64,000 nucleotides of DNA from Guillardia theta CCMP2712 (lineage: Eukaryota > Protista > Cryptophyta). Below are positions 1-64,000 of this stretch, piece after piece (position 1 is the stretch's first letter; every line of letters begins with the position of its first letter). The DNA is taken from positions 335,626 to 399,625 of the forward strand of contig NW_005434646.1 in the NCBI RefSeq assembly GCF_000315625.1, written 5' to 3'. The notes under the pieces were generated by a model, which searched no databases, had not been told where the DNA came from, and was given only the letters and a program-made list of their open reading frames with translations. A program made the position numbers and the translations under genes.

Positions 1-150
1 CCCTCCCCTCCCCTCCCCTCCCCTCCCCTCCCCTCCCCTCCCCTCCCCTCCCCTTCCTCCCCTCCCTCCCTCCCCTCCCTCCCTCCTTTACTTCTCCCTC
101 ATTTTGCCTCCCTCTCCTCTCTCCTCTCCTCGCCTCTCCCTCCTTCCAAC
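1..150. repeat. (CCCCT)n / polypyrimidine microsatellite
   Basis: Pure CCCTC pentamer run at 1-55 degenerating into a C/T tract. Confidence 0.95.
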
Positions 151-9168: not shown

Positions 9169-9778
9169 GGCGGTTGATCGCAAGGGGATGACGTCGAGGT
9201 TCGAGATCTCCCAGTGCTTCGGACTCCTCCTCTTTTCCAATCCTTCCCCTCCCCCTTTTCTCTCTCCTCCTTCCTCTCTCCCCTTCCTCTCGTTTATCTC
9301 CTCGCCTCTAGCCTTCGTTTGCCCTGCATGTGCATGCGGACTGAACTCAAAAACCCCATCCCCCCTCAGTCCCACATGCAAGATTCGGCCGGCAGCAGAT
9401 TCGGCAGACCTTTCGGTGGCACAACATGCTAGTGGCAAGCGGGACGGGCGTGAGCAAGCAAGCAGAGACTTGAAGCGAAGACGAGGAGAGGGAGGGAGGG
9501 AGGGAGGGAGGGAGGAGGAGGAGGAGGAGGAGGAGGAGGGGAGAGCAAGGATGGGGTGAGCTTGAGAAACGAGGGCGAGAGAAGTAGATCAGAGAGAAGG
9601 CGAGGAGGAGAAAGGTTGTCAACATTCTTTACATGGAGCATTGATCAAATACCAAGAGATTCTTAGAAGAAAGTGAAAGAAATGGGAGAGTGAGCACTTC
9701 GCCCGCTTCCATTTCTTGCGTCAACGTCTTCCTTCACGAGTGTTGCATATTTCTCACGGTTTGGAGCAGGAAGAGGAG

Positions 9779-11328
9779 ATGGCAGATGACAAAGAAGAGC
9801 AGCAGAAGAGCAGCAAACGGACGAGCTGGAAGCCGACGCGGACAAGCTTCGTCGCTGAGACTCGACAGGAGCCCAAACATGAAGTTCACCCGACGAGCGA
9901 ATATGAGGTCAAGCTCCCTCGCAAGGTGCCGATCAGCTCGTCCCGCAGGCCCCTCGTCGACATCCTCTCCCACGACGAGCTGTGCAGCCTGTGCCATAAC
10001 ATCCCCAAGATAGAGCTGCATGCCCATCTTTCGGGAACAGTCAAGGAGAGCACGTTGAACGAGCTGGGGAGAGCCAAAGGGCTGGACATCTCGAAGATGA
10101 AGTTCACGCTGGAGTCGCTGGCAGCAACAGACTCTCTTGAGCAGACTTGGAAGGAGACGGTCGAAGCCTTCGACAACATCCGCAAGCTCACTGCCTACGA
10201 CCTCCATGTCCTCCGCAGGATCATCAACGAGGCCATCGAGATGTACGCGGAAGACGGATGCGTCTACCTGGAGCTTCGGACGGGGCTGAAGCATCTGCCA
10301 GACAGGAAGACGTTCTTGTCGGAGGTGATCTCAACCATCAACTTGGCGCAGGGGAAGCATGGCATCATCGTACGGCTCCTCGTCAGCGTCGACCGGGGAG
10401 CGTCCGTGGAAGACGCGAGAGAGACGATTTCGATCGCAATCGATGCGTACGAGTCTCAGAGCAAAGGCGGAGGGCAACGGGGAGGAGGAGTGCTGGTGGG
10501 TGTTGAGATGGGCGGCAACCCGTTGCGGGGGAACTGGGACGAGCTCCGTCCGCTGTTCCAACAGGCCAGAGACGCGGGAATGAGAGTCTCTTTACATTTC
10601 GCAGAGAACAAAGGACACGAGGAAGAGCACGAGAAGATCCTCGAGTTTCGACCTGACAGGCTGGGACATGCTGTGTTCATGAGCAAGAAGATCACCGACA
10701 AGGTCCTGAACACCAAGACACCAGTGGAGGTGGAGTGTCTATGATACTTGAGAAGGACTGAAAGGCTGATGACAGGTATGCATCACGTGCCATGAAGCCT
10801 ACTACAAGGTAGACAGGAAGAAGAACGTCTTCGGGATCCTCAAAAGGTTTCGATACTTTCGCTCCCTCCTCTGGTCAATCACTTTGCTCGTGCCAGTCAC
10901 AATCATCCAGCTATCCTCTGCTGCGACAACGCGTGCCTCCTCCACACCCTCCTCAGCAAGGAGTGGGAGGTAGCGATACAAACCTTTAAGCTGACAGCAG
11001 AAGACGTACAACACATGGTCCTTGACAACGTCGATGCGATCTTTGCCGACAGTGTGACCAAACAGAAGGTGACTGGTCGAGGCATCCGGGCATTCGATGA
11101 CTTGATGCCTTCCAGCTTCGAGTGCAATGCGAGAATCGGCTCAAGTCATTGTTTACCAAGAGCGAAGCGCCACGGTCAACGACGAAGATTAAGAGTACAT
11201 TCCTGACGAATTTGTGCAGAGCAAGAAAGTCAGGAGGAGGAGGATGGCAATCTTTGTTGTTCTTGTCATTGTCAGCAGCGTGTCTGGGAGGCCTCTACTA
11301 CCTTCGTGTCGTCAAACGAGCAATCTAA
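9779..11328 (+). CDS. ADAL: Adenosine deaminase-like protein (ADAL/MAPDA family), multi-exon, with C-terminal hydrophobic tail
   Basis: PKIELHAHLSG, YLELRT, SLHFAE and PDRLGHA motifs. Downstream exons join through short introns to the stop at 11328. Start may include a tiny exon near 9551. Confidence 0.8.
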
Positions 11329-11354
11329 CTTGCGCCCTTTCATATTGATTATGT

Positions 11355-12482
11355 TTATGATGCATCTTGAATACTTTTAACCAAGATTGACCTGAGCCTC
11401 TCCTTCCTGTCTCCAGAATCTTTGTCTGACTCTAACTTCTTCGAGAAGCTGTCTCCCCTGACACTCCTCTTGAAGCTCCAGAACTGCTTCGACAGCAGCA
11501 TATGCCGCCTCATCTTGAAGAGGTCCGCACCGCTCCTCGGGCGAGATTCGGCATGCAAAGGTGACTGCACGACGTTGCGAATCACCCGCATCTTGTGGTC
11601 GTCGAGGTTCTGACCGAAGATCCGCGCTGACCCCTGCTGGATCAACGCAGTGCTGATGAGCTTCTCGCGAGGAAACGCTTCTTCACGGCAGAAGTGAGAC
11701 ACGAGCCTCTCCACCACCCTCGTCCCCAGGTCCTCATCGCTGACTCCACGAGACTCCACCTCCCTCATGTCTATCGGAGGGGAGAAGGCTTGCAGATGGT
11801 GCCATGCCGTCACCGTGTGCTTCCCATCCTCGGCCTCGCACAGCACCTGCGCATGCCTCCACCAGGCAGGGTCACCCGATCCTTGACCGCTCCAACCAGT
11901 CGAGCATGCTATCTGTCCATCCTTTACCATCTCGTTCTCTTCCAACAGGACAGGGATGATCCAGTGACCCGCATTCACGGCGTATGAGAACTCACACCTG
12001 CACTTGTTAGAGAGCACGTATGCGTCACTCAGAAACATCAAAGTGACGGCAGGCACGTTGTCGTATCCGCTCCCATTGATGTACTTCTGATCGATCCAGC
12101 ACACCAGGTCAGTTGCCTTGGCGATCAGATGGCAAAGTGATTGGATCAACTTCATGGCTCGATTGCAGGTTGAGGCATGCAGCGACTTGTGGAACTTGAG
12201 CATCCAGGACTCTCCGGAGTGTGGATCTAGCAAGTGCATAATCCTCTTTGGGGACTGATAGATCTCCAGGAGGCGGCTAGAAGAGCTCTTCCCTTTGAGG
12301 ACATCCCTAGCGTTCCTGGCAGTGCCGGAAGTCCCTGTCGTCTCGATGGAAGGGCCTTCGCTCTTTGGATCGCTCGAGTGATCCCTTGCTGACCCCGTTT
12401 GTTTTACCTGCCTCGTCGTCGGAGTCGTTAGCGGCGTCCTGTAGCTCATGCTCTCCGACAAGGACTGACTACGGTACAACAC
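11355..12482 (-). CDS. TIR(TIR_2)-like domain protein; probably further upstream exon(s) to ~12.8 kb
   Basis: LVCWIDQ...LMFLSDAYVLSNKCRCEFSYA...IIPVLL matches the TIR_2 pattern (W.D, LS..Y..S..C..E...A, IIPV). Confidence 0.6.
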   Translation of the reverse strand: MLYRSQSLSESMSYRTPLTTPTTRQVKQTGSARDHSSDPKSEGPSIETTGTSGTARNARDVLKGKSSSSRLLEIYQSPKRIMHLLDPHSGESWMLKFHKSLHASTCNRAMKLIQSLCHLIAKATDLVCWIDQKYINGSGYDNVPAVTLMFLSDAYVLSNKCRCEFSYAVNAGHWIIPVLLEENEMVKDGQIACSTGWSGQGSGDPAWWRHAQVLCEAEDGKHTVTAWHHLQAFSPPIDMREVESRGVSDEDLGTRVVERLVSHFCREEAFPREKLISTALIQQGSARIFGQNLDDHKMRVIRNVVQSPLHAESRPRSGADLFKMRRHMLLSKQFWSFKRSVRGDSFSKKLESDKDSGDRKERLRSILVKSIQDAS

Positions 12483-13991
12483 TTATCTTCCACTTGGTGT
12501 TCAACCGCTGGCAGTTGAACGAGGATGCCGGTGGCGTCGGAGTTCCCCGGTCAGGCGGCCAGCTGGTTCGCTGCCGCTCGCTCTGCAGGCCCGGGCTATG
12601 CACCTCAAGAGCTCACAGGGCGAGTCAAGGACTCAGTCAGGACCTTCATTGAGTTCCGGCATTGCGATGCTGCACAATCGCGATCGGACCATCGACATGC
12701 ACGAGCCCCCAGTGCTTGCCTGCCTCCTCCTTGCATGGGCGGGGCTGCCGCATCTGATCCGTTGACGATCTGAGTTGACTTCCCTTGACCGAGCGTAACT
12801 GGAGCAACATAATCGTAACCGGGGGAGATTTCATTGCAGCCGTTACAACTCACGAAACTTGGCCTGGCCGCCTCAAAGGACCACCTCGCTATATCGTAAG
12901 TGGGGTATGTCGTGGACCCACCCCTATCAATCACAAACACTCCCCTATGAAATATAAGGGTACCCACCCACCTAAACTAATTTTGTTACCCCCTCTTGCC
13001 TGGGGATTGGGTTAGCTGGATGTCTACGACCCTTCTCAATTTGGTGGGTGGGGTACATACCCTACCCTCCTATTCATGATTCCAGCAATTAGTGAAATAC
13101 CCACCCTTTGTTCAAGAATCGAGCAGGTTGTCCCACCTGTTGCCATCAACAAATAAAAAACATTTAATAATTTCAGCATAAAACTTTGTTTTCAATACAA
13201 ACTTTAAAGTATTTTAATAATTCTCGGTACGCTATGCCTCAAGTACAACAAAAGGTATTTACAAAATTGAGGCCGTAAGCACTAGAATTCTGCCTGTTAA
13301 TTCGACCCTCCCCGTCAAGCGATAGCTCAAATTCTTGAATGAGTAATCGAAATGTACAGTATTATATATAATAATATAATATGATATAAATATCATCTAA
13401 AATAGTTTTTAACTTTTTCCTCAATTGTTCTTCCCCCGGCGCAGGCATGCTGGACATTTCCTTTGCCTATGTAGCTTCTAGGCGCCCTTCCCCCTACCCT
13501 CCCCTCTACCCTCCCCCTCCCCCTCCCCCTCCTTCCCCCTCAAATTTCGTTGTCACTGTGCGTTCTCATCTTGCACTGCAATCACCGCTATCATATCCTT
13601 TCAGCTTTCCTTCCTAGATCCGTGAAACCCGAATCAGCTTCAACTAGAAAAACTAAAGCATCAATCACCACAATCACCAACACTACTATCACAACCATCA
13701 GCTTCCACAATCACCTGTATATAGCATGTGGGTGTGATATGCATGAACTACTCTTCTTTGTTTGGATGTGTATTTCCCATGTTTCAGTCCCATATGTAGT
13801 TGTCTCATTCTGAATCCGCCGAAACCTTGCTGGCCACCTCCATTCAACAATTGTATTGATCTTTGTTAATTTCTTTTGATCTAGAAATAATTGCCAATGG
13901 TTGTGAAGTTGAGCATTTATCTTGAAAGTAACCTATTTGCTGACTTATAGCTCTCACAAAGGGATCCGAAGATAGTGAAGACACACGGAGG

Positions 13992-15996
13992 ATGGACCAA
14001 TCTTCACCCGAGGGTATAAACCACGACAGCCCTGTTGAGAAATCCAATTCAGAGTGGGTAACGTTCGAGGCTGGAAATGATTCCAGCAATGGGCACATAA
14101 ATGGCCATGAAGTGAGGAAAGTTGTATTTCTATGCCCTGAATTGACATAATGTCTGCAGTTGGACAAAACATCTTCAAGTGATGCCGTAAAAGAGTTCTC
14201 CTCCTCCAACGAATTTGAGGACTCGATAACTGACGATATCGGCAATGAATCCACAACATCCGCAGCTCCAGGGTCCGAGGAGCCGAGCACAGGAGGGTTT
14301 GACGGGCTGATGGGAGGCTTCGGGGAGAGCACTGGACAGGAGGGCGTGGGAGCCGGAGGAGCCGGAGGGTTTGAGGAGGTAGGGGGCTTCGGGGACACAT
14401 CCACGACAGCGGCAGCTCCAGGGTCCGAGGAGCCGAGCACAGGAGGGTTTGACGGGCTGATGGGAGGCTTCGGGGAGAGCACTGGACAGGAGGGCGTGGG
14501 AGCCGGAGGAGCCGGAGGGTTTGAGGAGGTAGGGGGCTTCGGGGACACATCCACGACAGCGGCAGCTCCAGGGTCCGAGGAGCCGAGCACAGGAGGGTTT
14601 GACGGGCTGATGGGAGGCTTCGGGGAGAGCACTGGACAGGAGGGCGTGGGAGCCGGAGGAGCCGGAGGGTTTGAGGAGGTAGGGGGCTTCGGGGACACAT
14701 CCACGACAGCGGCAGCTCCAGGGTCCGAGGAGCCGAGCACAGGAGGGTTTGACGGGCTGATGGGAGGCTTCGGGGAGAGCACTGGACAGGAGGGCGTGGG
14801 AGCCGGAGGAGCCGGAGGGTTTGAGGAGGTAGGGGGCTTCGGGGACACATCCACGACAGCGGCAGCTCCAGGGTCCGAGGAGCCGAGCACAGGAGGGTTT
14901 GACGGGCTGATGGGAGGCTTCGGGGAGAGCACTGGACAGGAGGGCGGGGTAGGATCAGGTGGTGTGTTTGACTCTTCCTCACCACCTGGGTTTTCGGATG
15001 TGCAGACTTCTTCTGTTTCCGGTTTGGATTTCCCTGGTCAGAGCGGGGAAGAGCCTTCGGCCTCTTTTGATTTCCCTCCATCTCGTCCAGTACCGACTAT
15101 TCCCAGCTCCATCCCGGATGTCCAGGTTGCTGGAGATCCGTTTTTCGGCAATGGCGTCTCTGGAACGCAGTCTCAAGCAGTAGAGACGCCTACGGAGAAG
15201 GATGTTATCTCAGATGTCACTGATGACTGGGGAGAAGAGGAGAAGGAAAAGCCCAAGCTCAACTTCAAGATAAGATCCAAAGAAGAGATTGAAGCTGAGA
15301 ACGCAAAGAATGCCGTTTCCCTCTCTGCAGTGAACCTTGGACTTCCCGTAGCACCTGCTCCATCAGGCAGGTCTCGCCGGCAGGTTGCAGTCTTGTCCGG
15401 ACAGAACTCTTCGGGATCAAGTTTGCACAGTCCCAGTATGGACTCCCCCCAAGCGTCGACACCTACTGCAGCTGCTCCTTCCTTCTTCCATGCCAACAAC
15501 GTTACGCCAGAGGACCGTATCAAGCAACTCGAGGCGCAAGTCACAGAATTGAACGGCAAGCTTGAGAAGGTAACAATAGATTTCTGATTGGATTCGATTG
15601 ACAGATGATGACAGGCTTTGAATGAGAACAAATTGCTTCACATCAAAGTTTCGTCGCTCAATCGCGAAATTGATGTAATCAGCTGATGCTGTGCTCGATT
15701 TCACTGACCGGTTTGCTACAGGACTTCCACAATAAAGCGGAGACCAACACAGTAACGCCTTTGTGTTTGCACATGTTAACCTGACTCTCTGTAGGAGCAC
15801 AAGCTTGAAGAGTTGGAAGCAGCCTTGATTCAGGTGACGCCAGAGCTTTTCTCTCGCACCTTCTCACTTGGCGCAGGCCAAACTTCAAAATGCGGAAGAT
15901 GCTTCGATTATCTTGCAGTTGAAGCACAAGGTAAGAGAACAAGGGTCTATGATTTTTTAACTTGCGACACAGCTCAAGACAAACGGAATAAGTTAA
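13992..15996 (+). CDS. Acidic Gly/Phe-rich repeat protein with C-terminal coiled coil, multi-exon
   Basis: Long ORF 14160-15587 plus short flanking exons with GT-AG introns. 50-aa repeats; RIKQLEAQVTELNGKLEK coiled coil. Ends approximate. Confidence 0.6.
14262..14946 (+). repeat. Coding tandem repeat, 150-bp unit, ~4.6 near-identical copies
   Basis: Unit recurs at 150-nt spacing and encodes AAPGSEEPSTGGFDGLMGGFGESTGQEGVGAGGAGGFEEVGGFGDTSTTA. Confidence 0.97.
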
Positions 15997-23496: not shown

Positions 23497-23691
23497 CATC
23501 TCTGTGATGGAGGATGTGTCCGCTATCTCTGTGATGGAGGATGTGTCCGCTCATCTCTGTGATGGAGGATGTGTCCGCTCATCTCTGTGATGGAGGATGT
23601 GTCCGCTATCTCTGTGATGGAGGATGTGTCCGCTCATCTCTGTGATGGAGGATGTGTCCGCTCATCTCTGTGATGGAGGATGTGTCCGCTC
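23497..23691. repeat. 27/28-bp minisatellite (ATCTCTGTGATGGAGGATGTGTCCGCT[C]) x7
   Basis: Direct tandem repeats visible. Confidence 0.95.
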
Positions 23692-25838: not shown

Positions 25839-28800
25839 ATGACAGAGGAGCTCATTGGCGTCGGTCTTGGCCTCCGAGCTCAAGAGAGCATGGAATCAGG
25901 TTGGAGCCCTCGAGGGCAAGACTGGCAGACTTATCCTCGCCCAGGCCCTTTTATCGTTGGCGACATCGTAGCTGAGAGTGCAGCAGCACGGGAAGGGACT
26001 ATCGAGGTCGGCGACGTCCTCGTTTCAATCGACTCCATCCTCGTCCTCCATATGTCGATGCAGCAGGTCCTCGACCTGCTTCGCGGACCTCTCGGCTCAA
26101 CCGTCGTGCTCGTTGTCCTCAAGCCCGAGTCGCAGCGGGAGCTTCGCGTGCATCTTCAGAGGACAGGACTTCGTCACACCCAGTCATCTCACGCATCTGC
26201 TCCGGAGGTTGTCCGGAGCAACGACTTGCCAACCAGGTCAAGGAGGAGGAGGAGGAGGAGGAGGAGAGGATGGGGCCTTTTTCTGTCCTCATCCTTGCTG
26301 CTGCAGGGCGGAAGACGAGCGACTCTTTTACACGCGGTCGGAGAGCAGCAGGAGACCGACAGGAACTTTCGAGAAGTACATCGACCTGACGACTCAGCTG
26401 GGCTTCTCCCTGCGGCTGGGGATTGACGGGATTTACTTTGTCGGAGGGATCGCCGACGCCTCTCTCATCCAAGGGGACCTGCAAGTTGGTGACATCCTTC
26501 ACTCCATTGACGGCCTGCCTGTGACCTCGAGGCCTTTCAACGTCATCAGCTCCTTGCTCGAGCCCAGCAAGCAGTCCAGGAAGATTCTTGCCCTGCTGGG
26601 ATCGAGAAGGGAAAAGGCGATGCTCTTCCACGGGCTGAATGAGTTCTCCTCCTGGAAGGCTGTCATCATCGACCCAGTCCGCTGCGAGCGACGGAAGAAG
26701 TCGAGCGCAGACATTCTCATCGATGTAGCAACAGAGGAGGAGTGTCAGATTCACCTCTCCCTGCATCCGAGCAGCTTCTCGCGGCCCATCAACGACGACG
26801 AGCACAAGAAGAGTGTCCTGCACTCGATGCTGATCAACGAGGTCTCGAGGCTCCTGCAATCTTCTGCCATCCGTGTCTCTGTGCTGGAGCTTCTTCCCGA
26901 GGCAAGAACAGCAGCAGTTGAGCTGCGACAGCCGATACAGGAGGGAGAGAGCCCGATTGAGGTGGTAGCAGAGAGGCTGGTCACGGCGATCAACACTCGT
27001 ACCACCCCTCCCTACACCTCCTCCTCCCCTCCTCCTCCACCCGAATTCTTTCTGATCTCCTCGGCCTCCTTGAGATTGCAAACAAAGAGGAGAAACTCGG
27101 CGATTTCTCAACGAGGGGTTATCACTCAGCAGAGCCCCAGCTTGGGGGAGATAGGCATGAAAGTGGCGGCTCTGATCCACAAGGCAGAGGGTCGGGAGAT
27201 TCTGTCGGACGACCTGCAGGAGGTGAGCAAGTCGCTGTTGGGTGTTGGGCTCGTCCTCTACTGGGACGAGTTATCTTCTCTTCCTCGCGTCGACGATTTC
27301 TATCCTACTGTCCCGCTGCTTGGCAAGGAGTTTCTGCAGGAGAACGACTTCATCCTTGCTGTGGATGGGAACAGCACGAGGGGGGAGGGGCTAGCGCGTG
27401 TGATGATGTGGATTGCTGGGGAAGAGAGGCGGCGCGTGGAGTTGCAGGTGGTGCGAGGAGAGAGCTTCTGCTGCACGACGAGACGAGCGAGGAGGGAGTG
27501 GACGTTGGCTGTGATGAGGGGATCGGGAGAAGTCATTGAAGTGATGGAGGACATCGCGGTGGAGGCCAAAGGGAACGACGTTGGGATGATGAAGGAAGAA
27601 ACGATGCGAGGCGAAGAGGAGGTGTCCTCGAAAAAAGTGATGATGAATGGAGACTTTCACACTGCACCTGAGCGAGTGCTGGCGAATGGAGGAGGGAATG
27701 GAAGGGTCGAGATTGAAGAAATCAAAGGCGAAGGGGAATACACGGAAGCAAGTGGTGGCGACGATAAGCAGCATGACGACAGCAGCAAGTTCGAGCAAGT
27801 GGGACCAGTGACCATGGTGAGAACATCCCACAAACGCCTTCCTTGCTTCTCTTCTGATTTTCTTCTCAAGACGATCGATGGACTTCAGGCCGATGAATTT
27901 ATCCAAGAAATTCCCGAGGATCCAATTCTGCCAGAGAATCCAGTCAAGCAGGAGAAGGAACAACCTGTCTTCAACCATCCTCCCCCGGTTCTCAGTGAGT
28001 CTCGAGGAGGACGAGGAGTGGCGAGCGAGTGGGGCGATAAGGGTGTGGGTCTTATGCCTTCCTCCAGACATCTACGTGCGGAGATTGACGATCCAAGTCC
28101 TGAGAGCCTCGGACATCTACCACACTCAACTGCCCAAGAAAGTGGTAGGGAGGGGGGGGGGGAGTCAGGAGGGAGCAGCGGCAGCTGACAAGACTGCAGG
28201 CCTGCAAGCTCAAGTTTGTCCACCCCCTCTACGAGCCGCACGAGCTGAAGAGCCTCGACGGGGTTCACGAAAACACAGAGATTTACTTCACTTCCCGCCC
28301 GGTCGTCGTCGATCTCGCCCAGTACATGGTGGCTTCCCCCGCTAGTCTATTGTTCCTCTCCTCACCCGCTATTGCCCTCCCCTCCCCCCCTTCCCCTCCC
28401 CTCCCCCCCTTCCCCTCCCTTGCTTCCCTTCCCCTCCCTTGCTTCCCTTGTTCACTCCTATCCTCGTCACTCATCATTCTTCCTTCCTCTTGCCTTCCCT
28501 GCCTCATTTCACCGATCGCTCCAGATCGACCGCGTTCAGCTGCACGTGAGCTTGTGGGAGGAATATGCCCCGGGGAAGCAAGCCTGCGGTAAGGGAGAGG
28601 AATCAAACTTTGAGAGAGGCGAGCGAGATGAGAACTCACTCTCTGACTGTCAAGATGGTTTATCAGAGTTTCTCGGGGAAGTCTTCCTGGATGTCTTTCG
28701 ACTTGATAAGGTGAGATTCTATCAATCTGTTTCGACGTCATGTATGATGTTGTTGACAGATAAACGACTCGATCTTCGAGCACTTTCAGCTGCAGGTCTT

Positions 28801-39730: not shown

Positions 39731-42700
39731 TTATGATGTGCTTTGTGTGTCCTTTGGCTCCTGTAAATCTTCTGTGTCTTCAAAATCAATGGACGATGAC
39801 AATTTTAGCACTCCTTGCTTCTCCATGCTCGTGACAACCTCTTGAGCATTTAGGGCTTGAACCTGATGCTGTGGAGATTCATCGCTATCTCTGCTCGCCG
39901 CGCCACCTTCTGAGGAGAGTGAAGACAATCGTGATAGGATGCTGCTGATTCTCGATCTTCCTCTTCCTATTGGCGATTCCAATGGAGAGCATGAGCGATT
40001 CAAGATTGATCGGAATGTTGGACTTGTTCCAGTCCTGCCGAACTCCGAATCCTCATCCTTATCGGCAAAATGATTTACAAAGGAGAAGAGGAGCGCTCGA
40101 CTTGATCTCTGAAAGCTGTCGTTGCGTCCTAATTCCGGGTTGTCGTCTTTGATCCAAGCCATCACTTGCCAGTCTTTCCACGACGATGCATCGGATGGAA
40201 GCTTCGACAAGATCACATTCATCTGTAGACAAGAGTAAGCTAGGTGCGGTCAACAAGATCACTCAAACCTCAAAGGGGTTGATGATCACTGTGTCTAGCA
40301 CGGGTTTTTGAGATATGCCAGCTGTTCCGATCCATCGGATGATCCCACGAGAATGCAGAAAGTCGTTGATGATATTCAAATTCATCTGACCCTGCAAGAA
40401 GGCATGATTGTCCATCTCCTCCCTGCAGACTGAAATGTAGTCCTTCCAAGGCAGATGAACTCTGCGCTCTTGAGCTAATTTACAAAGGCGATGCTCTATT
40501 TTCTCAAACAGAGGATGATTCCACTCGATGACCTCTTCCAACAGAGCTTTTACAGCATCCTTAAAACAATTTCAATCGAATAAACAAGACATGGTTGATA
40601 CCTGTATTTTGTTACAGAATTCATCCCAATGGGATGACATGCTTGAAAGATACACAACTTCTGCCTCAAGGAGCTTGAACGACTCCTTTCTCATCCTCCA
40701 AGCTGAAACGTATGATTTCACGATTTCATATCTTCTGAGCACTTCTTCTTCATCATCCTACATCATAGGTCACTTTGGACCACAGGAATAACAAAGCACT
40801 TGCCTCGGACTCAACCACCAGAGCAAACAGTATAACACACTGCGTCATGGACTCTGCCAAAGAGTCCAGGTTTGACCACATGCTTACTTTGGTTTCCAGA
40901 GATCCAGAGCAAGACAAGACATAGCAGTATACAGCATCTTGCACAAGCATGAATTGTCTGCAGGTAGCGAAACGTGCGGCCCCAGAAAGTTTCATGAGAG
41001 AGAATTTGTACATGTTGGAGAACTCAGGGGTCCACTGAACTTCTCGAGGGTAAGCAGTTTCTTCTTGGGGTGCCTTGGCAACAACCTGACCATTTGTTCC
41101 ATACTCACACACAGACGAGTGATTTTTAAGTTTGGAAATGAGCAAATCTTTAGCATCGTCATTCTCTCCTATCAAAATCAAAGAAAGCCTGAAACGATCG
41201 TTCTTCACCTTGCACTGCTTCAGATATTCAATGACGTCTTTGGTGTTGTCATCTGCTAGGTACTTTGGAGGATGTATCAAATTATGGCAACCTTTCAGAT
41301 TCAATTTTGCGAGATTCGGTCGGATCCAAAGATACTTGCCCTCCTTTGTTTTCTCCAACAATCCTTTGGTTGGAACTTTGCGAAAATTGTTTTCGCCAAG
41401 CTGAATTTCTCGCAAGTTTTTAAGCCGAAACAAGACCGAAGGAAATTCGTTCAATCCACAACCAGATAGATCAATGCTTGTGCATGGTGAATCTTCTACC
41501 TTCTTCAAATCAAGCTTGGAAATGATCTGAGCAGCGAATAGCGCTTCATAGTTCTCCATGTTCTGTGGTAGTATATTAACGTTCTTTTTTTCCAAATTTA
41601 TGCCATTCAGAATTCTGAGGCAAGTATTTGTTATCACCACTGAAGTTATCATTTGTCTGCCTCGTTTGTCTAAATCAATCTTTTGTACGTCCAAGGAGAT
41701 CAGATGGGTACGATAGCTTGAGGTCTTCAAAACTTCAACGAACCTTTGGAGTCCCTCATACTCGATTTGCGAAATATCGAGATGAGTTTCGAGCACTGGA
41801 TTTGACGAGATCGAGAGCTGAGACACCAACTCCAAGGCCCCGATAGCTTCACTGAAAGCATAAATCGATCTTGAACCAAGATTATTATCTGAAACGTCCA
41901 ATCTAGTCAATCTGCTGTGCTTCACCAGCATCCCCACCAAAGACCTCATGCCATGAAACCCCATGTGGTTCCCTTTTAGATTCAAGCTCAATAGAGTGGT
42001 GTGGATCGAGAAGGCTGTAGCAAACGACTTGATCCCATCCGAACCCAAATCATTGTTACTCAGATCCAACGTCGTCAAAGGTGTCCAGAAGAACCCAGCC
42101 ATCAAAGCTTTGATACCTTCACTCCCTATGCGATTGTATGCTCCACAACGCCCGCCAATGTCAAGTTCGACCAAAGTACTCCTCCTTTCTGTGAGGATGT
42201 TGACGAGAGCACGTGAACCACCCAAGAGGAAAGAGTTGCTCGCAATACCTAGATAGGTTAGGCTAGGAAGAGCTCCAACGTCACTGACAATCCATTGTAA
42301 CTTTTTCAAGAAGTCTGGTCCATCACTGCTTTGATAGGAATACTGGCGAATATTACCAGAAAGCTCCAATCCTTGCAATGATGTTATCTCCTTCAAACCC
42401 TGCCCTAGAGGAACCAATCCATTGGATGAGATCTTGTTTAGAGACAAGTCCAAATACTTGAGCATTGACAATGCAGGGGTAGATAAGGCTAATACTTCCA
42501 CACCAGCATCGCCAATTTGATTGTCTGCTAAAGACAAATGTGTCAACCCAGTGAGCTCCTTCAAAGATTGACTTAGTGCTATCATGCCGCTATATCTGAT
42601 ATCATTCTTGGCCAAGATCAGAGTTTGCAGAAATGTACAAGTCTTGATGGCTTGTGCAAAATACCTCCTTGTTCCTTCACTTGTTATCCAATTGTTAGAA

Positions 42701-44083
42701 ATATCTAAGGATTGAATCGAATTTTGCGAACTGAGACCGTAACAAAAATCGGACAAAAGACTGAGCTCAAGTCGATTTCCAGTTCTCACTACGAGAGTGT
42801 TAGGGGGAATTACAACATAAGGAGAAGTAGAATATTTCTTGAACAACCACCTTCGAGGGCTGGCAGCGGGGTCGGAACCTGATGTATTTCTGAAGAGCAG
42901 CGGTTCCTCTGATTTCTTTCTAGAGGTTTCAACAGTTTCTACCTGACGTCGATGAATGCTCTGATTCGGTGATTTCTTGATCAGTGGAACTTCCGCAACG
43001 TCACACAACCGTTTGATTTCTCGTTGTAATGTTTTGATGATTGCTGGAGGCTTTACTACATCTCTGAGAGGAGAATCTTGGAATTCTTCAATCAACGATT
43101 CATCTGACATATTCCATACATCGCGAAGTTGAGATTCACAATCATCAGTCATCTGATGCGCTTTTATGGTCTCACGAAGTACTGTCAATTCAGAGGCTAG
43201 ATTGTCTTGTTTCAATGCTCGTTGTTGGATCAGCTGATTTAAAGTCATCTTCAAGAAATTCAAGGTTTCCTGATCAAAGTGATCCTTATTGACTGTCGAA
43301 GAACTCTTTAGTGTCTTCTGGATCCTTCGCTTAATTTCTTGGTATTGGTTTTCGATATCAACGAGTTCCAACTTTCTGGCTGTAAACGAGCTTGCGATTG
43401 CTTCCAAGTTCTCTGGGGAGGTCAATTCATGTCTGATTCTCCGTATCAAGGAGGGTGATTTGTATTTAAATGGGCTGCTGCGACTGTCAGTGTAGGTATC
43501 AAGAGAACTCCTTGAATTCTGTGAAACGTTGTCAAACCATGAATGCAAAGGATCCTGTTGCATCACCTGTCCGCCTAATAAATCGGGAAGCTCAAAACCT
43601 GCAAACAACATATCAGATCGAGCAAATTGTTATCGCGAATTACTTGAAGAAAATGAATTTTCTCCCAAGCTCTTCATATCGTCCTCCTCCTTCAGCCATT
43701 TTTTCTTGGAGGATTCTGCTGGGCTCTCGTAAACAGCAACTTGTTCCACCCTTCTTGTCGAAACAGGAGGAAACCGTGCCAGAGGATTTCGCCAAGGTTG
43801 TTTATCAGGGTGCGGACTCTTAACACCTCCTTGCCTCCACGTCAATCTGATGGAAGATAATCGAGAATGCAGGTTATCTTGCCTCTGCATTCTACTTTTG
43901 GAGGAGTTGTATCTTTGCAAAACTGATCAAGTTCCAAGGGTTTCATGTCGATCAGAATCATGATGAGAATGGACACCAGCGTCCAGGAAGGGCATCGTAG
44001 CAGGAGACTTTCACAAGAATCAGGATGAAGCTTCGGTCTACCTTGTTTCAGAGCTCTCCTCGTCTGCCCATAGGCACGACCAT
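39731..44083 (-). CDS. LRR + degenerate Roc-COR (Roco-like) protein
   Basis: RNI-like and typical LRRs, LIHPP..., LILIGENDDAKD (P-loop position), CRQFML..AVY, and COR-like FLHSRGII...TVIINP. Start approximate. Confidence 0.7.
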
Positions 44084-46742
44084 GCGGGACTAATCAACTA
44101 CCCCTCTTTCCCTATTGCTTTGAACCCGTGCTGTGCCTCAATTTATCAACTAACCTACTAAACCCCCGACGTCAGTTGAACCCTCCTCTCGACCCGAGGC
44201 GGCTCGCGGCCCGCCGCCGGGGGGGGGGTGACTGACTGTCGGCTGATGGGACTCGTGATCAGCCATGCAGTTCCCTGCCCCAATTGGGCTACTCTAGTCC
44301 AACTCGATTCCTACCGGAAGGTTTCTTCTCAGGAAGCTGCTGTGTCTCTCACTCACTGAGTCAGGTCTCCTCATGTCGCCGCCCTTATTCCATTCATTCC
44401 TCACCTGCCTCGGCCGCTGATCCTCTCCTAATAAGTTTGAGAGCTGCATGTCGACTCGGTCTTCGCTTCTGTTTCCATAGGTCACCTTTCGTATCTACTG
44501 CAGGTCTAACTGCTTACTGCTTGCAGGGTGCTGAAGTGGGACTCTCCCTCCCCCGCTTGAACCTATTTGAGAGCCCCATCTCACTCTCTTGCCCTATCCA
44601 TCCCGACCCCTGTGATCCCCCATACACGCACGATTTCTTTGCTCTCCCTCCGGTTGCTTGTTGTTCCTCTGCTTCCTATCTGCTACGCTGCTTTACGTTT
44701 CTCTCATCTTCTGCCCGTTCTTTGCTGGATTCAGACTCTGTTCTGAGCTCTTCCTCTCCTCACTCTGCACTTGTAAGACTCTGCCATGCATCCTAATGCT
44801 GCTATTTACTCACATCTTATCCGCTAAAATACTGCATGTTTACATTACTGCACTTTCTGATACTTACGTGGCATTGTTGAACCAATGAACGTCAAGGGTC
44901 GAGCCAGAAGTCAAGCATGCATGTAGTCCGTGATGTCTTACTTGCTTTCATCTTGGAATTATTATTATTGAGAGTTCTATTTGCTAGTCGAATCTATCAT
45001 TGAGTCCTTTTACAACGTTTGCTTGGTGTAGAAATTGGTTGAAGAAGGTTGATTGGCTTCCCAAGTTTTTTCCTTTTTGATTTCCCATACACGTCGAATT
45101 CAATTCAGCATGATGAGAATTACCGATGAGAAGCGGTCACATTTAGATTGAAAAACCATTAAAACCATCATCTTGACGTCATTAACCGGAGAGTAACTGA
45201 TTGGTTTCCAACCAGATCGCTCTTAGGAAATTATATTACGTCAAACTTCTCAACCTTGTGGCCGTTCCAAAGAAATTCATGCAACTTGACAAAGAAATTG
45301 TCTACCACTTATGTGTTCTACCGATCCAAATGCATACATTCAGAATAACCCTTTGACGCAGCCTGAAAAACATCTTTGGTGCAATTTTCATTTTTCAGTT
45401 TCGTCCGAAGCTGGTGCATCCTGTAAATCTGAACAAGCATGAAGGGTTTGATTGGCTCTCAGTTCTCAAGAGACTCTTGTTTCAAGTGTCAGGAGCGCTC
45501 TTGCATGCTTTAACGAAACGGCATCCCCTTCTGATTGCAGCGACACGGTGCGACGACATTTTGCGTGCAGCCCTTCACAGAGGCCACCACGGTCCAACCC
45601 ACCCCAAAAATACCCAGAACTAGAGCCCAAGGTGAACATCCAGATATCAAGGGCACACAAAAGCGAGACCTCAAAACCTACCCTACCCCTTGTGTGCACA
45701 CACCATGTGGTGCGTGTGCACCTGGGTCCCAGGTTAACGTGTACATGTGTACACAGATCTTTATTTCTAGTAATCTTGGGTGTACATGAAATTAATTCTG
45801 TGGGCAATTGCTCAGTACGCTGAGGCAAGCTTGCAGTGGTGAAGATATTCCCGCCTGCCATGCCGCGGACATCAATGCGAGCAGCTATTCACCCGTCACA
45901 ACTCACAAGATTGCAACGAACAATGTGATAAGAAGAGATCATTGTGAGTGCTTTCAAAGGAGCAAACGTCCAAGAACACACCCAGCTAAGAAATCTTGTA
46001 TGAAGGGAGTTGAAGTGGACAGCACGAATGGACAGAAGCATAAAGACGGCAAAGTGGTCAAAGCTCAAACAACAATGATGCACAGCAACTACATAATCAA
46101 GATCAAGGAGATGGACAAGAGGGAAGCAGATGTCGACATCGGTATCAAAGTGAAGCGGCCAGATTCGCACGAGTGGCAAAGGAGATAAAGTCTTGCAACA
46201 ATTGATCGTCCATCTCTGCTGTCTCAATCTGTGCCGTAGTGGCATCAGATAAGATGGTTCTAGGCAGACTCTCCGGTGCATTTTGATTCTCCATTCATGA
46301 GGTGCTGTGTGGAGTTGTGAAGCCATCCAGTAACTGTCGTTTGGTTTATATTCGTAGTCTAACTACTCAGTACTGAATAAAGTTCTGTGTGAGCCTTGAG
46401 GACAGATGCCCTGGAGGCAAGCATAACAACGCGAAATAAGACTCAGTGTGCCGATGAGACGGGGCTTTGTGCAGCAACTACTCCCCCTCCCCCCCCCCAC
46501 CCCCACCGCCGCCGCCGCCGCCGCTGGGGTGCAATGCACCGAGTGAGAAGGAGCAGAGAGAACTTGATATAGGCCAAGTAAGCACTCAGTCTTCTCGTCG
46601 GTTCTAATTTGTTACTTGTCTATTACATGCTATGCACAATATGTCCTTAACTTTGAGTAGAGATGTCAAATGATCCTTCCCAAACTACACCGGGTGACCA
46701 TAGCTCATGTACATGAGACAGATTTATTGCCAGGTACCATGC

Positions 46743-47686
46743 CACTTAATTGTAATGAAACGTGAGGAGACAACTTTTTGCGAATAAATCATAATTTTTA
46801 TCTGTTTTGCGAATAAATCATTATTTTTATCTGTTTTTATAAATCAATTTATAATTTCAATGATTTTTATATTCAATCAAAAAATCTGTTCATTGCTCTT
46901 TGTTTTCCTTACCAAATCCCTATCATATTTTATTCAATTGAAATAATAGCTGCGCATTCGTGCCAATTATTACACANNNNNNNNNNNNNNNNNNNNNNNN
47001 NNNNNNNNNNNNNNNNNNNNNNNNNNNNNNNNNNNNNNNNNNNNNNNNNNNNNNNNNNNNNNNNNNNNNNNNNNNNCACCCACGGAGTGGGCCAGAGCCA
47101 AAACATAATATTAATTAAAATTATGAATCCTTCAAGGGTTATATAAGTAACAAAAGAGGCGAAGGGCAATAATTGAATTTCACCCTTCGCCAATATTCAC
47201 CCTTCGCACACACACACGGCTTAATTATTCTTATCTTTTATTTTTTTGGCTCTATAACTTGCATAATTTATTTAGGCGAAGGGGCGAAGGGTGAAATTCT
47301 ATTTTCATATTCTATTTTATATACCTCATAAAGTAACAAAATTATAATATTATCCCAAAAATTGAATTTCACCCTTCGCCCCTTCGCCTAACGTCTATAT
47401 ATCCTCTTTTTACCCTTCTTTTACCCTTGTATCCAGCTAAAACATGGCAAAGGGTCCCCTTCGCTTCTCCCTTCGCCACCCCTTCGCCTCCCTTCGCCAC
47501 CCTTCGCCACCCTTCGCCACCCTTTGCCAAACTATCCCCACTCTATTATAATGTTATATATTATATATTATCTATTATTTTTCTCCTTTTTATTAAAACC
47601 CCTTTATCATTACGCTTCCAGCAACCATTATTATACTAAATTATATTCTTTTTTTTATTATTATCTATCTTTCTTTATTATAAATG
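46743..47686 (+). repeat. Left terminal inverted repeat (includes a 100-N gap)
   Basis: Reverse complement of 48699-49569 except for the gap and one ~100-nt segment with adjacent 1-nt indels. Confidence 0.95.
46977..47076. other. Assembly gap (100 N)
   Basis: Run of N. Confidence 1.
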
Positions 47687-48277
47687 TCTTGTGACAATAG
47701 ATATCAAAATTTATATCAGTATGTCGGCACTACTAATAACACAACTCTCACGCCTATTTTTAATAAAATAAATTCAAATATCAATGTCTTGTATAGCAAT
47801 GTAGATATCCTTAATCATCAGACATCCGAACTATTTCAGAAGACTAATGATCTAGAAATTATCACCATTGAAACAAGTAATAACTTGATAGAAACTAATG
47901 ATTTACTACTTATTACTAGTAATAATTTAATTGAAACAAGCAATATATTATTTAACACATCAAATTTTGTTCTAGATCTGCAATCTCTTATCAAATATAA
48001 TGCTGATACCAATGAAACCATTATAACAAACAACAATAAAAATATATTATATGTCAAATATCAGACTAACCCTAATAAATATATCATTAAATTCACACTT
48101 GAAAACGGCTCGTTTATTACAATTCAACAGATTAAACAACAATTAGATGATTTAAACAACAATGCTGCCGCGCAAGAAACCAAACACAAAAACATAAAAA
48201 ATATATGGAGTCATTGCTTGAATAAAAAGCGCAATATGTTAATTTCTTATTTTTTTATTTATCAAATTCAAGCATAA
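47684..48277 (+). CDS. Element ORF1: Asn/Thr-rich TSN-repeat coiled-coil/fibre-like protein, probably 3'-truncated
   Basis: Intronless AT-rich ORF; ETSNNLIET-type heptad-like repeats; ATG sits at the TIR inner end. Confidence 0.7.
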   Translation: MSCDNRYQNLYQYVGTTNNTTLTPIFNKINSNINVLYSNVDILNHQTSELFQKTNDLEIITIETSNNLIETNDLLLITSNNLIETSNILFNTSNFVLDLQSLIKYNADTNETIITNNNKNILYVKYQTNPNKYIIKFTLENGSFITIQQIKQQLDDLNNNAAAQETKHKNIKNIWSHCLNKKRNMLISYFFIYQIQA

Positions 48278-48701
48278 ATTTTAAATTTGACAATACTTTC
48301 TTATGTTTGTCGCTATTCACATGTGCCTTAAATTCATCCTTTGATGGTGTTTTATCAAATTGATGATCACACACGGGGCATTTATTATTGCTTTTGATAT
48401 CTCCAACTTTTAATTTAATTGCTTTATCATATCTTTCTTTGTTTGTCATTTTCTTTTGTTTAGGTCCAACACTCGCTTTATCCTTGTATTGCTGATTTGC
48501 ATTGATAAGTTTCTTAGGTTTGACTGGTTTTTCATATTGTTTATTTGGCAACTTGCCGTCATAAGTTTTTAGATCTTGCATTATACCTTTGACTTTATCA
48601 TATTCCTTCGATCCTTTCTTGACAACACACCAAGTGCCAGAATGACCTTTATTGAACTCTTTCAGCGCTTGAATCCATGTGTTGCCTTTTCTAGTACTCA
48701 T
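48255..48701 (-). CDS. Element ORF2: Lys-rich small protein with DVNP-like N-terminal motif and C-terminal C2H2 zinc finger
   Basis: WIQALKEFNKGHSGTWCVVKKGSKEYDKVKGIM and CPVC-x15-HVNSDKH. ATG sits at the TIR inner end. Confidence 0.8.
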   Translation of the reverse strand: MSTRKGNTWIQALKEFNKGHSGTWCVVKKGSKEYDKVKGIMQDLKTYDGKLPNKQYEKPVKPKKLINANQQYKDKASVGPKQKKMTNKERYDKAIKLKVGDIKSNNKCPVCDHQFDKTPSKDEFKAHVNSDKHKKVLSNLKFMLEFDK

Positions 48702-49569
48702 TTATAATAAAGAAAGATAGATAATAATAAAAAAAAGAATATAATTTAGTATAATAATGGTTGCTGGAAGCGTAATGATAAAGGGGTTTTAATAAAAAGG
48801 AGAAAAATAATAGATAATATATAATATATAACATTATAATAGAGTGGGGATAGTTTGGCAAAGGGTGGCGAAGGGTGGCGAAGGGTGGCGAAGGGAGGCG
48901 AAGGGGTGGCGAAGGGAGAAGCGAAGGGGACCCTTTGCCATGTTTTAGCTGGATACAAGGGTAAAAGAAGGGTAAAAAGAGGATATATAGACGTTAGGCG
49001 AAGGGGCGAAGGGTGAAATTCAATTTTTTGGGGATAACTGATGCTGCCGCAACTTGTTGCAGTTCACAGTGACAGTCCGATTGTTGACTCGGAGGCCTGC
49101 GGAGCCCCCCGCCCGGCGGCGCGGCGCATGACGGCATGAGCCAAAAAAATAAAAGATAAGAATAATTAAGCCGTGTGTGTGTGCGAAGGGTGAATATTGG
49201 CGAAGGGTGAAATTCAATTATTGCCCTTCGCCTCTTTTGTTACTTATATAACCCTTGAAGGATTCATAATTTTAATTAATATTATGTTTTGGCTCTGGCC
49301 CACTCCGTGGGTGCGCTCGTTTGTTTTTGTTATTTTGTGTAATAATTGGCACGAATGCGCAGCTATTATTTCAATTGAATAAAATATGATAGGGATTTGG
49401 TAAGGAAAACAAAGAGCAATGAACAGATTTTTTGATTGAATATAAAAATCATTGAAATTATAAATTGATTTATAAAAACAGATAAAAATAATGATTTATT
49501 CGCAAAACAGATAAAAATTATGATTTATTCGCAAAAAGTTGTCTCCTCACGTTTCATTACAATTAAGTG
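48699..49569 (-). repeat. Right terminal inverted repeat (871 bp)
   Basis: Mirror of the left TIR; identical mirrored spurious ORFs appear in the track (MYPAKTW..., MAKGEIQ...). Confidence 0.95.
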
Positions 49570-49796
49570 CATGCGCTTCCGATGCTGCCCCCCGGCTGTA
49601 GCTCATGAGTGGGATGAAAGTTGTTGGCGTGCTCAGTGCACCGGGATCATCCTAAACACCTGGCACATTTCCCCGGCCATCGTTTCGGTCAGTCAGTGAT
49701 TCACAATTGGCATCAGCTTCTTCAATTCGCCGGCTCTTACCAGCAATCTAGAGAAATCGCGCCGCCACAAGAAGTGGTCGTCAAATAAGAGTCTGA

Positions 49797-63717: not shown

Positions 63718-63869
63718 TTGCGACTCACTTACCCCTACCCACCCTTTGCTGGACCAATGATTACCCACCCTCCCGGCTTCCGTTGGATGCTAGTCGTTAC
63801 TAAGGTAACTGACGTAACGGATATTCAAGCGTTGGTTTCGCGTAGCTCAGGATGGCAGTGAGGTCATCC

Positions 63870-64000
63870 CCCCTCTCCTCTCCTCTCCTCTCCTCTCCTC
63901 TCCTCTCCTCCCCTCCCCTCCCCTCTCCTCCCCTCTCCTCTCCTCTCCTCTCCTCTCATCCTCATCCTCATCCTCCTCCCCTCCCCTCTCCTCTCCTCCT
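63870..64000. repeat. (TCCTC)n polypyrimidine microsatellite
   Basis: Tandem pentamers. Confidence 0.95.

What the first reader, a model, noticed from the sequence alone, without database searches (positions are those of the whole stretch)
48255..48701. DVNP-like chromatin-protein motif fused to a C2H2 finger on a mobile element
Seen: a very Lys-rich 148-aa protein with W-x2-A-L...W-x-V-V-K-K-G-S-x2-Y-x-K-V-K-x-I and a terminal CxxC...H-x5-H finger (U1/matrin-like spacing). Known, from memory: the C-terminal helical part of dinoflagellate/viral nucleoprotein (DVNP) has W-x2-A-V...F-V-x-V-K-K-G-T-x2-Y-x-K-A-K-x-L. Inference: a DVNP-related DNA-packaging protein carried by a virophage/PLV-type element into a non-dinoflagellate nucleus. 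This would be a possible vehicle for spreading this histone-antagonising family.
Basis: partly seen in the sequence, partly recalled or inferred. Interest (0 to 1): 0.8.

Follow-up and report, generated by a model that had tools for sequence, protein, structure and literature searches.

The report
Virophage-type basic protein sharing DVNP's tail
A small lysine-rich gene on a 2.8-kb inverted-repeat insertion carries a 40-residue module common in virophages, polinton-like viruses and giant viruses; the module also resembles the last third of some viral DVNP chromatin proteins, but the gene lacks the DVNP core and is not a DVNP.

Summary
ORF148 (48255-48701, minus strand) is real: 148 aa, 23% Lys, with one CxxC...HxxxxxH finger. 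Three known copies show dN/dS of 0.05-0.14.

The DVNP reading is only partly right.
- Pfam DVNP (PF19060) gives no hit, while control DVNPs score 72-100 bits.
- The conserved N-terminal DVNP core is absent.
- Residues 6-45 form an undescribed helix-loop-helix module. It has at least 153 relatives, mostly at the N-terminus of small basic proteins on virophage, PLV and giant-virus contigs.
- The module matches significantly only the C-terminal third of a minority of DVNPs. The best case is the Feldmannia virus FsV-158 DVNP (HMM E=5e-7, hhalign 85%, Foldseek prob 1.0).
- Against the DVNP family as a whole, hhalign gives less than 1%.

The carrier is a 2.83-kb AT-rich element at 46743-49569.
- Its inverted repeats are about 0.9 kb and nearly identical.
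- It is flanked by a 5-bp target-site duplication.
- The repeats hold 24 copies of GCGAAGGG.
- It has no capsid, replication or integrase genes.

Most likely ORF148 is a nucleic-acid-binding protein of virophage/PLV origin on a miniature derivative element. Nothing here supports histone antagonism. The host is a eukaryote that I could not identify.

The parts
46738..46742 (.). Left copy of the 5-bp target-site duplication (CATGC)
   Evidence: It directly abuts the outer end of the left repeat and is identical to 49570-49574.
46743..47686 (.). Left terminal inverted repeat. It contains a 100-N assembly gap and ends with the ATG of ORF197.
   Evidence: the repeat finder blocks I1-I3 are 100% complementary. 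Arm-to-arm blastn gives 99.4-100%.
47457..47517 (-). Array of six GCGAAGGG octamers at 10-12-bp spacing, 167-227 nt upstream of the ORF197 ATG
   Evidence: The window has 27 copies, 24 of them in the two repeats, against 2.3 expected.
47684..48277 (+). ORF197, an Asn/Ile-rich orphan ORF. It converges on ORF148 and their 3' ends overlap by 23 nt.
   Evidence: No Pfam, PHROG or word-search relatives were found.
48255..48701 (-). ORF148, the gene in the finding (148 aa plus stop). It has no internal stop or frameshift.
48567..48686 (-). N-terminal helix-loop-helix module (residues 6-45)
   Evidence: 153 relatives. Nearly invariant columns are W9, A12, L13, N17, W24, C25, K29, G30, Y34 and V37. 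AF2 places helices at 8-17 and 32-45/50 with pLDDT about 85-93.
48390..48566 (-). Lys-rich linker (residues 46-104), mostly predicted disordered
   Evidence: pLDDT is below 50 for 50-77. Residues 51-100 hold 14 Lys.
48297..48389 (-). Single C2H2 zinc finger (residues 105-135)
   Evidence: Pfam Zn-C2H2_12 scores 24.0 bits against a 23.2 cut-off. TAX1BP1 UBZ E=0.036. The four ligands are kept in all three orthologues.
48699..49569 (.). Right terminal inverted repeat. It begins with the ATG of ORF148.
48868..48928 (+). Mirror array of six GCGAAGGG octamers, 167-227 nt upstream of the ORF148 ATG
49570..49574 (.). Right copy of the 5-bp target-site duplication (CATGC)

Best explanation
ORF148 encodes a small basic nucleic-acid-binding protein of virophage / polinton-like-virus (PLV) ancestry. 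It has three parts: a 40-residue helix-loop-helix module with a basic K-K-G-S/T turn, a disordered Lys-rich linker, and one C2H2 finger followed by a helix. The module is an independent, widely shuffled unit in virophages, PLVs and giant viruses. A divergent copy of it forms the C-terminal third of the DVNP domain in a minority of viral DVNPs. ORF148 therefore shares one sub-domain with DVNP but is not a DVNP. The gene sits on a 2.83-kb AT-rich element with ~0.9-kb near-identical inverted repeats and a 5-bp target-site duplication. I read this element as a recent insertion made by a DDE (rve-type) integrase supplied from elsewhere, that is, a miniature derivative of a PLV/virophage-like element that has kept only its two repeat-proximal genes. 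Both genes start at the inner edge of the repeats, so identical upstream sequence drives them. Shown: the gene, its selection, the module family, its viral context, the partial DVNP likeness, the repeats, the duplication and the octamers. Inferred: DNA binding or condensation (coating or compacting the element's or a virus's DNA), the integrase type, and the derivative origin.
For: Gene reality: dN/dS is 0.05 and 0.13. Module family: 153 hits, nearly all to residues 6-45. Of 151 module proteins, 132 carry it at the N-terminus; median length is 126 aa and median K+R is 22%. Fusion partners include further C2H2 fingers and an HMG box. Fold: two helices around a basic loop, pLDDT 81 for the domain alone. 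Viral context: contigs encoding relatives carry Sputnik-type MCP (4), MCP_V20_C (3), Pox_A32 ATPase (5), V18/19, a DJR domain and rve. Named structural matches are a Klosneuvirus protein, a Yellowstone Lake virophage 5 protein and a Feldmannia virus protein. In one 19.2-kb IMG/VR contig the module gene lies inside a perfect 2,283-bp terminal repeat. DVNP link. DVNPs bind DNA strongly according to the literature (PMC6313786). Element: repeats and duplication; GC 0.33 against 0.46 and 0.58 in the flanks. PLVs are reported to have repeats of several hundred bp, 5-6-bp duplications from rve integrases, and GC 14-28% below the host (PMC12220804).
Against: No experiment or solved structure supports DNA binding. 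The module has no PDB sequence relative and no Pfam family. Fusions to a caspase and methyltransferases, and tandem paralogues that share only the module, fit a targeting or packaging tag just as well. The finger's best family is a ubiquitin-binding type and only marginally so. The element carries no capsid, ATPase, polymerase or integrase gene, so its PLV/virophage origin rests on relatives. The one close relative has a different downstream gene. An assembly gap lies inside the left repeat.
Confidence: 0.55

Rival explanations
1. ORF148 is a true, divergent member of the DVNP family and acts as a histone-displacing chromatin protein carried by a mobile element.
For: There is significant similarity to residues 51-88 of the FsV-158 DVNP and a Foldseek match. 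The protein is small and basic.
Against: There is no PF19060 hit at E<=10 or among 150 relatives, while control DVNPs score 72-100 bits. A DVNP HMM built here does not report ORF148 at all, and it touches relatives only with its C-terminal positions at 11 bits or less. The invariant core columns of 59 DVNPs have no counterpart. Family-to-family hhalign is below 1%. The module's first helix is shared by only about 2% of DVNPs.
Confidence: 0.05
2. The module is a protein-protein or targeting tag, for example for incorporation into particles or recruitment to a giant-virus factory. The finger is a UBZ-type ubiquitin reader, so ORF148 would be a host- or virus-manipulating adaptor rather than a DNA binder.
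For: The module is an N-terminal tag on proteins with unrelated bodies, including a caspase and methyltransferases. Three or four tandem paralogues share only the module. Pfam Zn-C2H2_12 is just above its cut-off and TAX1BP1 UBZ is the best PDB sequence match.
Against: The UBZ match is marginal (24.0 against 23.2 bits; E=0.036). Structural neighbours of the finger are RNA- or DNA-associated matrin/U1/JAZ fingers, though none is significant. Lys-rich tails, HMG-box and further C2H2 partners, and the DVNP link all point to nucleic acid.
Confidence: 0.2
3. ORF148 is a sequence-specific regulator that recognises the GCGAAGGG octamers in the element's own repeats, as a repressor, activator or end-binding factor, rather than a general DNA-coating protein.
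For: 24 octamers lie in the repeats against 2.3 expected in the whole window. Six are spaced about one helical turn apart, 167-227 nt upstream of both genes. A C2H2 finger plus a second small DNA-binding module would suit this.
Against: The 78%-identical relative L002 has no such octamer upstream of its gene, and other module-bearing contigs are not enriched. A single finger reads only about 3 bp. Nothing links protein and repeats except proximity.
Confidence: 0.12
4. The copy in this window is an inert passenger. The gene is intact only because the insertion is recent, and it has no role in this host.
For: The repeats are near-identical, which implies recent insertion. The element lacks every gene needed for autonomy. 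ORF197 has no relatives.
Against: This concerns only the present copy. Purifying selection among the three copies shows that the gene functions somewhere in the element's life cycle.
Confidence: 0.25

Closest known systems
DVNP (dinoflagellate/viral nucleoprotein, Pfam PF19060), especially the phaeovirus form (Feldmannia species virus 158, 100 aa)
   Same: It is small and very basic. Its C-terminal ~35 residues (aromatic residue, Cys, basic K-K-G-T turn, then a helix with Tyr and Val) align with the ORF148 module.
   Different: ORF148 lacks the N-terminal ~50-residue DVNP core, fails PF19060, has the shared piece at its N-terminus, and adds a C2H2 finger. Most DVNPs share only an invariant Phe and a Gly with the module.
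Uncharacterised small basic proteins of virophages, PLVs and giant viruses (e.g. Klosneuvirus KNV1 A0A1V0SKP5, Yellowstone Lake virophage 5 A0A0A0RJS4; P0004-P0151 here)
   Same: They carry the same 40-residue module at 40-60% identity, usually N-terminal and followed by Lys-rich tails.
   Different: Only the three ORF148 orthologues and P0017 combine the module with a C2H2 finger pattern. Most relatives are on viral contigs, not in a eukaryotic chromosome.
UBZ-type C2H2 fingers of autophagy receptors (Pfam Zn-C2H2_12; TAX1BP1) and matrin/U1/JAZ-type fingers
   Same: It is a single CCHH finger with a long inter-ligand loop and a following helix.
   Different: The scores are marginal or non-significant and the H-x5-H spacing differs from TAX1BP1 in the alignment. 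The subtype is unresolved.
Integrated polinton-like viruses and mavirus-type virophages
   Same: They share long terminal inverted repeats, a 5-6-bp target-site duplication, and much lower GC than the host (PMC12220804; PMC8547959).
   Different: This element is 2.8 kb rather than 14-40 kb, with no capsid, ATPase, protease, polymerase or integrase gene. It resembles a miniature non-autonomous derivative.

Membership tests
DVNP (PF19060) | Scores at or above the Pfam gathering threshold (25 bits) | tested here: not met
   There was no hit at E<=10 for ORF148, none among 150 relatives, and none among 10 relatives at E<=1. As a positive control, ten IMG/VR DVNPs scored 72-100 bits.
DVNP (PF19060) | N-terminal core block (11 of the 12 invariant columns in 59 DVNPs lie in the first 37 residues) | tested here: not met
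   The invariant columns are listed. A DVNP HMM built from A6 does not report ORF148 at E<=10 and matches relatives only with HMM positions ~70-124.
DVNP (PF19060) | C-terminal third of the domain | tested here: inconclusive
   It is significant for a subset: FsV-158 22 bits at E=5e-7, L129 at 2.7e-5, L075 at 9.6e-5; 0 of 10,900 shuffles reached 10.6 bits; hhalign 85%. Against the family it is not significant, with hhalign below 1%.
DVNP (PF19060) | Small, highly basic protein | tested here: met
   148 aa, pI 9.8, 23% Lys.
DVNP (PF19060) | Binds DNA strongly and displaces nucleosomes | not testable with these tools
   This is known for DVNPs from the literature only (PMC6313786; PMC5906630).
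Unnamed virophage/PLV/giant-virus 40-residue module family | Helix-loop-helix module with nearly invariant W9, A12, L13, N17, W24, C25, K29, G30, Y34 and V37 | tested here: met
   153 hits at E<=1e-3, conserved columns, and models with pLDDT 81-93.
C2H2 zinc finger, UBZ type (PF18112) | Four zinc ligands and a score above the cut-off | tested here: met
   24.0 bits against 23.2, which is marginal. The ligands are conserved in all three orthologues. Ubiquitin binding was not testable.
C2H2 zinc finger, matrin/U1 type | Structural match to U1-C / SF3A2 / JAZ fingers | tested here: inconclusive
   These are the top PDB Foldseek matches, but all have E>=5.
Integrated polinton-like virus / virophage | Terminal inverted repeats, short target-site duplication and low GC relative to the host | tested here: met
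   compared with PMC12220804.
Integrated polinton-like virus / virophage | Double-jelly-roll capsid protein, packaging ATPase, and an integrase or replication gene within the element | tested here: not met
   Only ORF197 and ORF148 lie between the repeats and neither matches such families.

The most novel reading that the evidence does not exclude
The DVNP domain is composite. Its C-terminal third would derive from, or be a fusion with, an independently circulating DNA-binding module that is abundant in virophages, PLVs and giant viruses. ORF148 shows that this module reaches eukaryotic nuclear genomes on small TIR elements. That would be a plausible route by which pieces of viral chromatin proteins, rather than whole DVNPs, are seeded into hosts.
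Probability: 0.3. Interest if true: 0.7.

Novelty: new variant of a known kind. Interest (0 to 1): 0.5.

Why it matters
DVNP is the only known wholesale replacement of histones in eukaryotes, and its origin is traced to giant viruses. Three results bear on that.
- Its C-terminal piece exists as a free-standing, heavily shuffled module in the virophage, PLV and giant-virus gene pool. This suggests how the domain may have been assembled and gives a handle on which part contacts DNA.
- The module family itself has at least 153 clusters and no Pfam entry. It is a sizeable unannotated component of these viruses.
- A 2.8-kb repeat-bounded derivative that keeps only two end-proximal genes is an unusual form of endogenous PLV/virophage-like DNA.

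The result also corrects an attractive over-reading: nothing here indicates a histone antagonist spreading through non-dinoflagellates.

Tried and rejected
- The word search with the 150-sequence alignment A2 returned only the two orthologues.
It worked with the 12-sequence alignment A3.
- Fetching the FsV-158 record by the accession printed in a paper's supplement failed because it is not in the collections. The same genome turned up as IMG/VR locus L102 (154,641-bp contig).
- The metagenome scan found only the JGI contig already known.
- ORF197 has no relatives and no Pfam or PHROG family.
- The 619-aa neighbour gene in L001 has no Pfam, PDB or PHROG match. I suspected a tyrosine recombinase from its C-terminal pattern, but that rests on memory alone and is untested.
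- The mimivirus-type early promoter octamer AAAATTGA occurs once per repeat and is not enriched (8 found, 3.4 expected).
- Rfam and tRNA scans of the window were empty.
- The host could not be identified. Exact look-ups of window proteins found nothing.
- The comparison with dinoflagellate DVNPs was left out. Their sequences lie beyond the stored part of the supplement and I had no reference for them, so I did not type them.

Full report
**1. The observation**

The minus-strand ORF at 48255..48701 exists with an ATG start and encodes 148 aa.
- It has 34 Lys (23%) and pI 9.8.
- Its two Trp are at positions 9 and 24.
- It has one finger, C108-x2-C111-x15-H127-x5-H133.

The word search found only two other copies. 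P0001 is 96% identical and comes from a Logan assembly. P0002 is 78% identical and comes from a JGI metagenome. Pairwise dN/dS is 0.05 and 0.13. This is therefore a real gene under purifying selection.

**2. Anatomy of the protein**

Pfam recognises only the finger: Zn-C2H2_12 at 24.0 bits against a 23.2 cut-off, with weaker zf-C2H2_2 and Rad50 hook matches. The best PDB sequence match is the TAX1BP1 UBZ finger at E=0.036.

An AlphaFold2 model with 150 aligned relatives gives:
- helices at 8-17 and 32-45, with pLDDT about 85;
- a disordered Lys-rich stretch, with pLDDT below 50 for residues 50-77;
- a short helix at 87-95;
- the finger, followed by a C-terminal helix.

The PDB structural neighbours are U11, U1-C, SF3A2 and JAZ fingers. 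All have E>=5, so the finger subtype is open.

**3. The N-terminal module**

An exhaustive HMMER search with the three orthologues gave 153 proteins at E<=1e-3. Nearly all match residues ~6-45 only.
- Nearly invariant columns are W9, A12, L13, N17, W24, C25, K29, G30, Y34 and V37.
- Of 151 module proteins, 132 carry it at the very N-terminus, 9 only at the C-terminus, and 3 in two copies.
- Median length is 126 aa and median K+R is 22%.
- No Pfam family covers the module.
- Partner domains include C2H2 fingers, an HMG box, a caspase and methyltransferases.
- The module profile has no PDB sequence relative.

**4. Where the relatives live**

Two long metagenome contigs encoding relatives carry a double-jelly-roll capsid domain, a faint A32-type ATPase hit and GIY-YIG nucleases.

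A scan of IMG/VR gave 14 loci. Twelve are on contigs of 6.5-26 kb (two of these loci lie on one contig) and two are on giant-virus bins.

A Pfam scan of 114 ORFs from these contigs found:
- Sputnik-type MCP (4);
- MCP_V20_C (3);
- Pox_A32 (5);
- V18/19, DJR-like, rve and primases;
- no DVNP.

One 19.2-kb contig has a perfect 2,283-bp terminal inverted repeat with the module gene inside it, 520-924 nt from each end. One contig has three tandem genes that share only the module, and a giant-virus bin has four.

Named structural matches in BFVD are a 63-aa Klosneuvirus protein (53-54% identity), a 100-aa Feldmannia species virus protein, and a 620-aa Yellowstone Lake virophage 5 protein.

**5. The DVNP question**

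PF19060 is the Pfam DVNP model (bioRxiv 10.1101/2024.02.09.579734). It never matched ORF148 or its relatives.

To have a positive control and real comparators, I read the published DVNP alignment (PMC11953307, Supplementary Data 3). From its core block I wrote a 32-nt degenerate DNA pattern. I scanned IMG/VR with that pattern.

The 120 loci yielded small ORFs. The ten that I scanned hit PF19060 at 72-100 bits, with the 77-position profile spanning residues ~3-82.

A module HMM built from alignment A3 was run against these DVNPs.
- L102 scored 22.2 bits, E=5.3e-7, at residues 54-87.
- L129 gave E=2.7e-5 and L075 gave E=9.6e-5.
- Two more hits had E about 2e-3.
- Every hit lay in the C-terminal third.
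- None of 10,900 shuffled DVNPs reached 10.6 bits; the maximum was 9.7.

Further comparisons:
- hhalign of the module family against the L102 DVNP gave 85% probability, E=6e-6, over 35 columns at residues 51-88.
- BLASTP of ORF148 against it gave E=4e-4.
- hhalign of the module family against 59 diverse DVNPs gave below 1%.
- By column, DVNPs share with the module only an invariant Phe (at W24), a Gly (85%) and about half-conserved basic residues. The first-helix Trp is present in 2%.
- A DVNP HMM does not report ORF148 at all. It touches relatives at 11 bits or less, and only with its C-terminal positions.

It concerns the tail of the DVNP domain in a minority of viral DVNPs, not the core that defines the family. 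The paper places dinoflagellate DVNPs next to the phaeovirus ones. They may therefore share this tail, but I had no reference to their sequences and left that comparison out.

**6. The element**

- Inverted repeats span 46743-47686 and 48699-49569. They match in 100%-identical blocks of 234, 176 and 333 nt and at 99.4-100% by blastn.
- The outer ends are flanked by the 5-bp direct repeat CATGC.
- Element GC is 0.33 against 0.46 and 0.58 in the flanks.
- The repeats run through the ATG of both genes, so ORF197 and ORF148 have identical upstream DNA. The genes converge and their ends overlap by 23 nt.
- GCGAAGGG occurs 27 times in the window against 2.3 expected. 24 copies lie in the repeats, with six at 10-12-bp spacing 167-227 nt upstream of each ATG.
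- Relatives lack these octamers.
- No capsid, ATPase, polymerase or integrase gene lies between the repeats.
- Neither ORF has an internal stop or frameshift (0 breaks counted).
- Similarity to the close relative L001 covers the ORF148 gene only. There the next gene is a 619-aa ORF on the same strand.

Published PLVs have repeats of several hundred bp and 5-6-bp duplications when an rve integrase is used. Their GC is 14-28% below the host (PMC12220804). Mavirus makes 5-6-bp duplications (PMC8547959).

I therefore read the element as a miniature derivative inserted by an integrase supplied from elsewhere. This is inference, and an assembly gap inside the left repeat calls for caution.

**7. The host**

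Long ORFs in the window match eIF2A, PDZ and LRR families, so the host is a eukaryote. I could not name it, so 'non-dinoflagellate' is unverified.

**8. Function**

The best-supported reading is a nucleic-acid-binding protein: a basic helix-loop-helix module, a Lys-rich linker and a C2H2 finger. It may coat or compact DNA, or act at the repeats. The main rival is that the module is a targeting tag and the finger a ubiquitin reader. None of these was tested.

**9. Slips and omissions**

- My notebook records the coordinate at which similarity to L001 ends. That could be read as the place of a deletion junction. I have not repeated it here and have deleted nothing.

Noticed in passing
within the repeat arms 46743-47686 and 48699-49569: The two arms differ by one block of about 100 bp, with GC 0.25 in the left arm and 0.64 in the right. 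The left arm also holds a 100-N assembly gap where the right arm has 22 nt. The GC-rich block occurs nowhere else in the window.
   Followed up: partly
47457-47517 and 48868-48928: The octamer arrays place GGG runs every 10-12 nt with 7-nt loops. On sequence alone this fits a G-quadruplex-forming pattern on one strand. I did not test it.
   Followed up: no
L016 (IMGVR GVMAG-M-3300027983-2) 8361-14141; L003 8154-11011: Tandem arrays of four (438-511 aa) and three (178-336 aa) genes share the N-terminal module. I did not compare their bodies. They look like a paralogue family built on one N-terminal tag.
   Followed up: partly
L001 555-2414: A 619-aa ORF lies next to the ORF148 orthologue in the Logan contig. 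It has no Pfam, PDB or PHROG match. Its N-terminus is Lys/Pro/Gln-rich.
   Followed up: partly
window 14249-14998: Four to five tandem copies of a 150-nt unit (85-99% identical) lie inside overlapping long ORFs. This is probably a repeat-containing host gene.
   Followed up: no
window 23497-23690: A minisatellite of 27-28-nt units is present.
   Followed up: no
window 1-135, 28355-28472, 63859-63995: C/T-rich low-complexity tracts of CCCCT/CCTCT type lie at both window ends and once inside.
   Followed up: no
window 40753-43611 (minus strand): A 952-aa uninterrupted ORF with many leucine-rich repeats (LRR_6, 81 bits) lies in a stretch of lower GC, 0.43.
   Followed up: no
L129 6159-6422; L075 4306-4569: Two 88-aa giant-virus DVNPs (PF19060 at 75-76 bits) have a C-terminus that matches the loop and second-helix start of the module (Phe-Cys, then a Pro/Lys/Gly/Ser-Thr turn and a Tyr). 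The first-helix Trp is not matched. The module-like tail is therefore not confined to phaeoviruses.
   Followed up: partly
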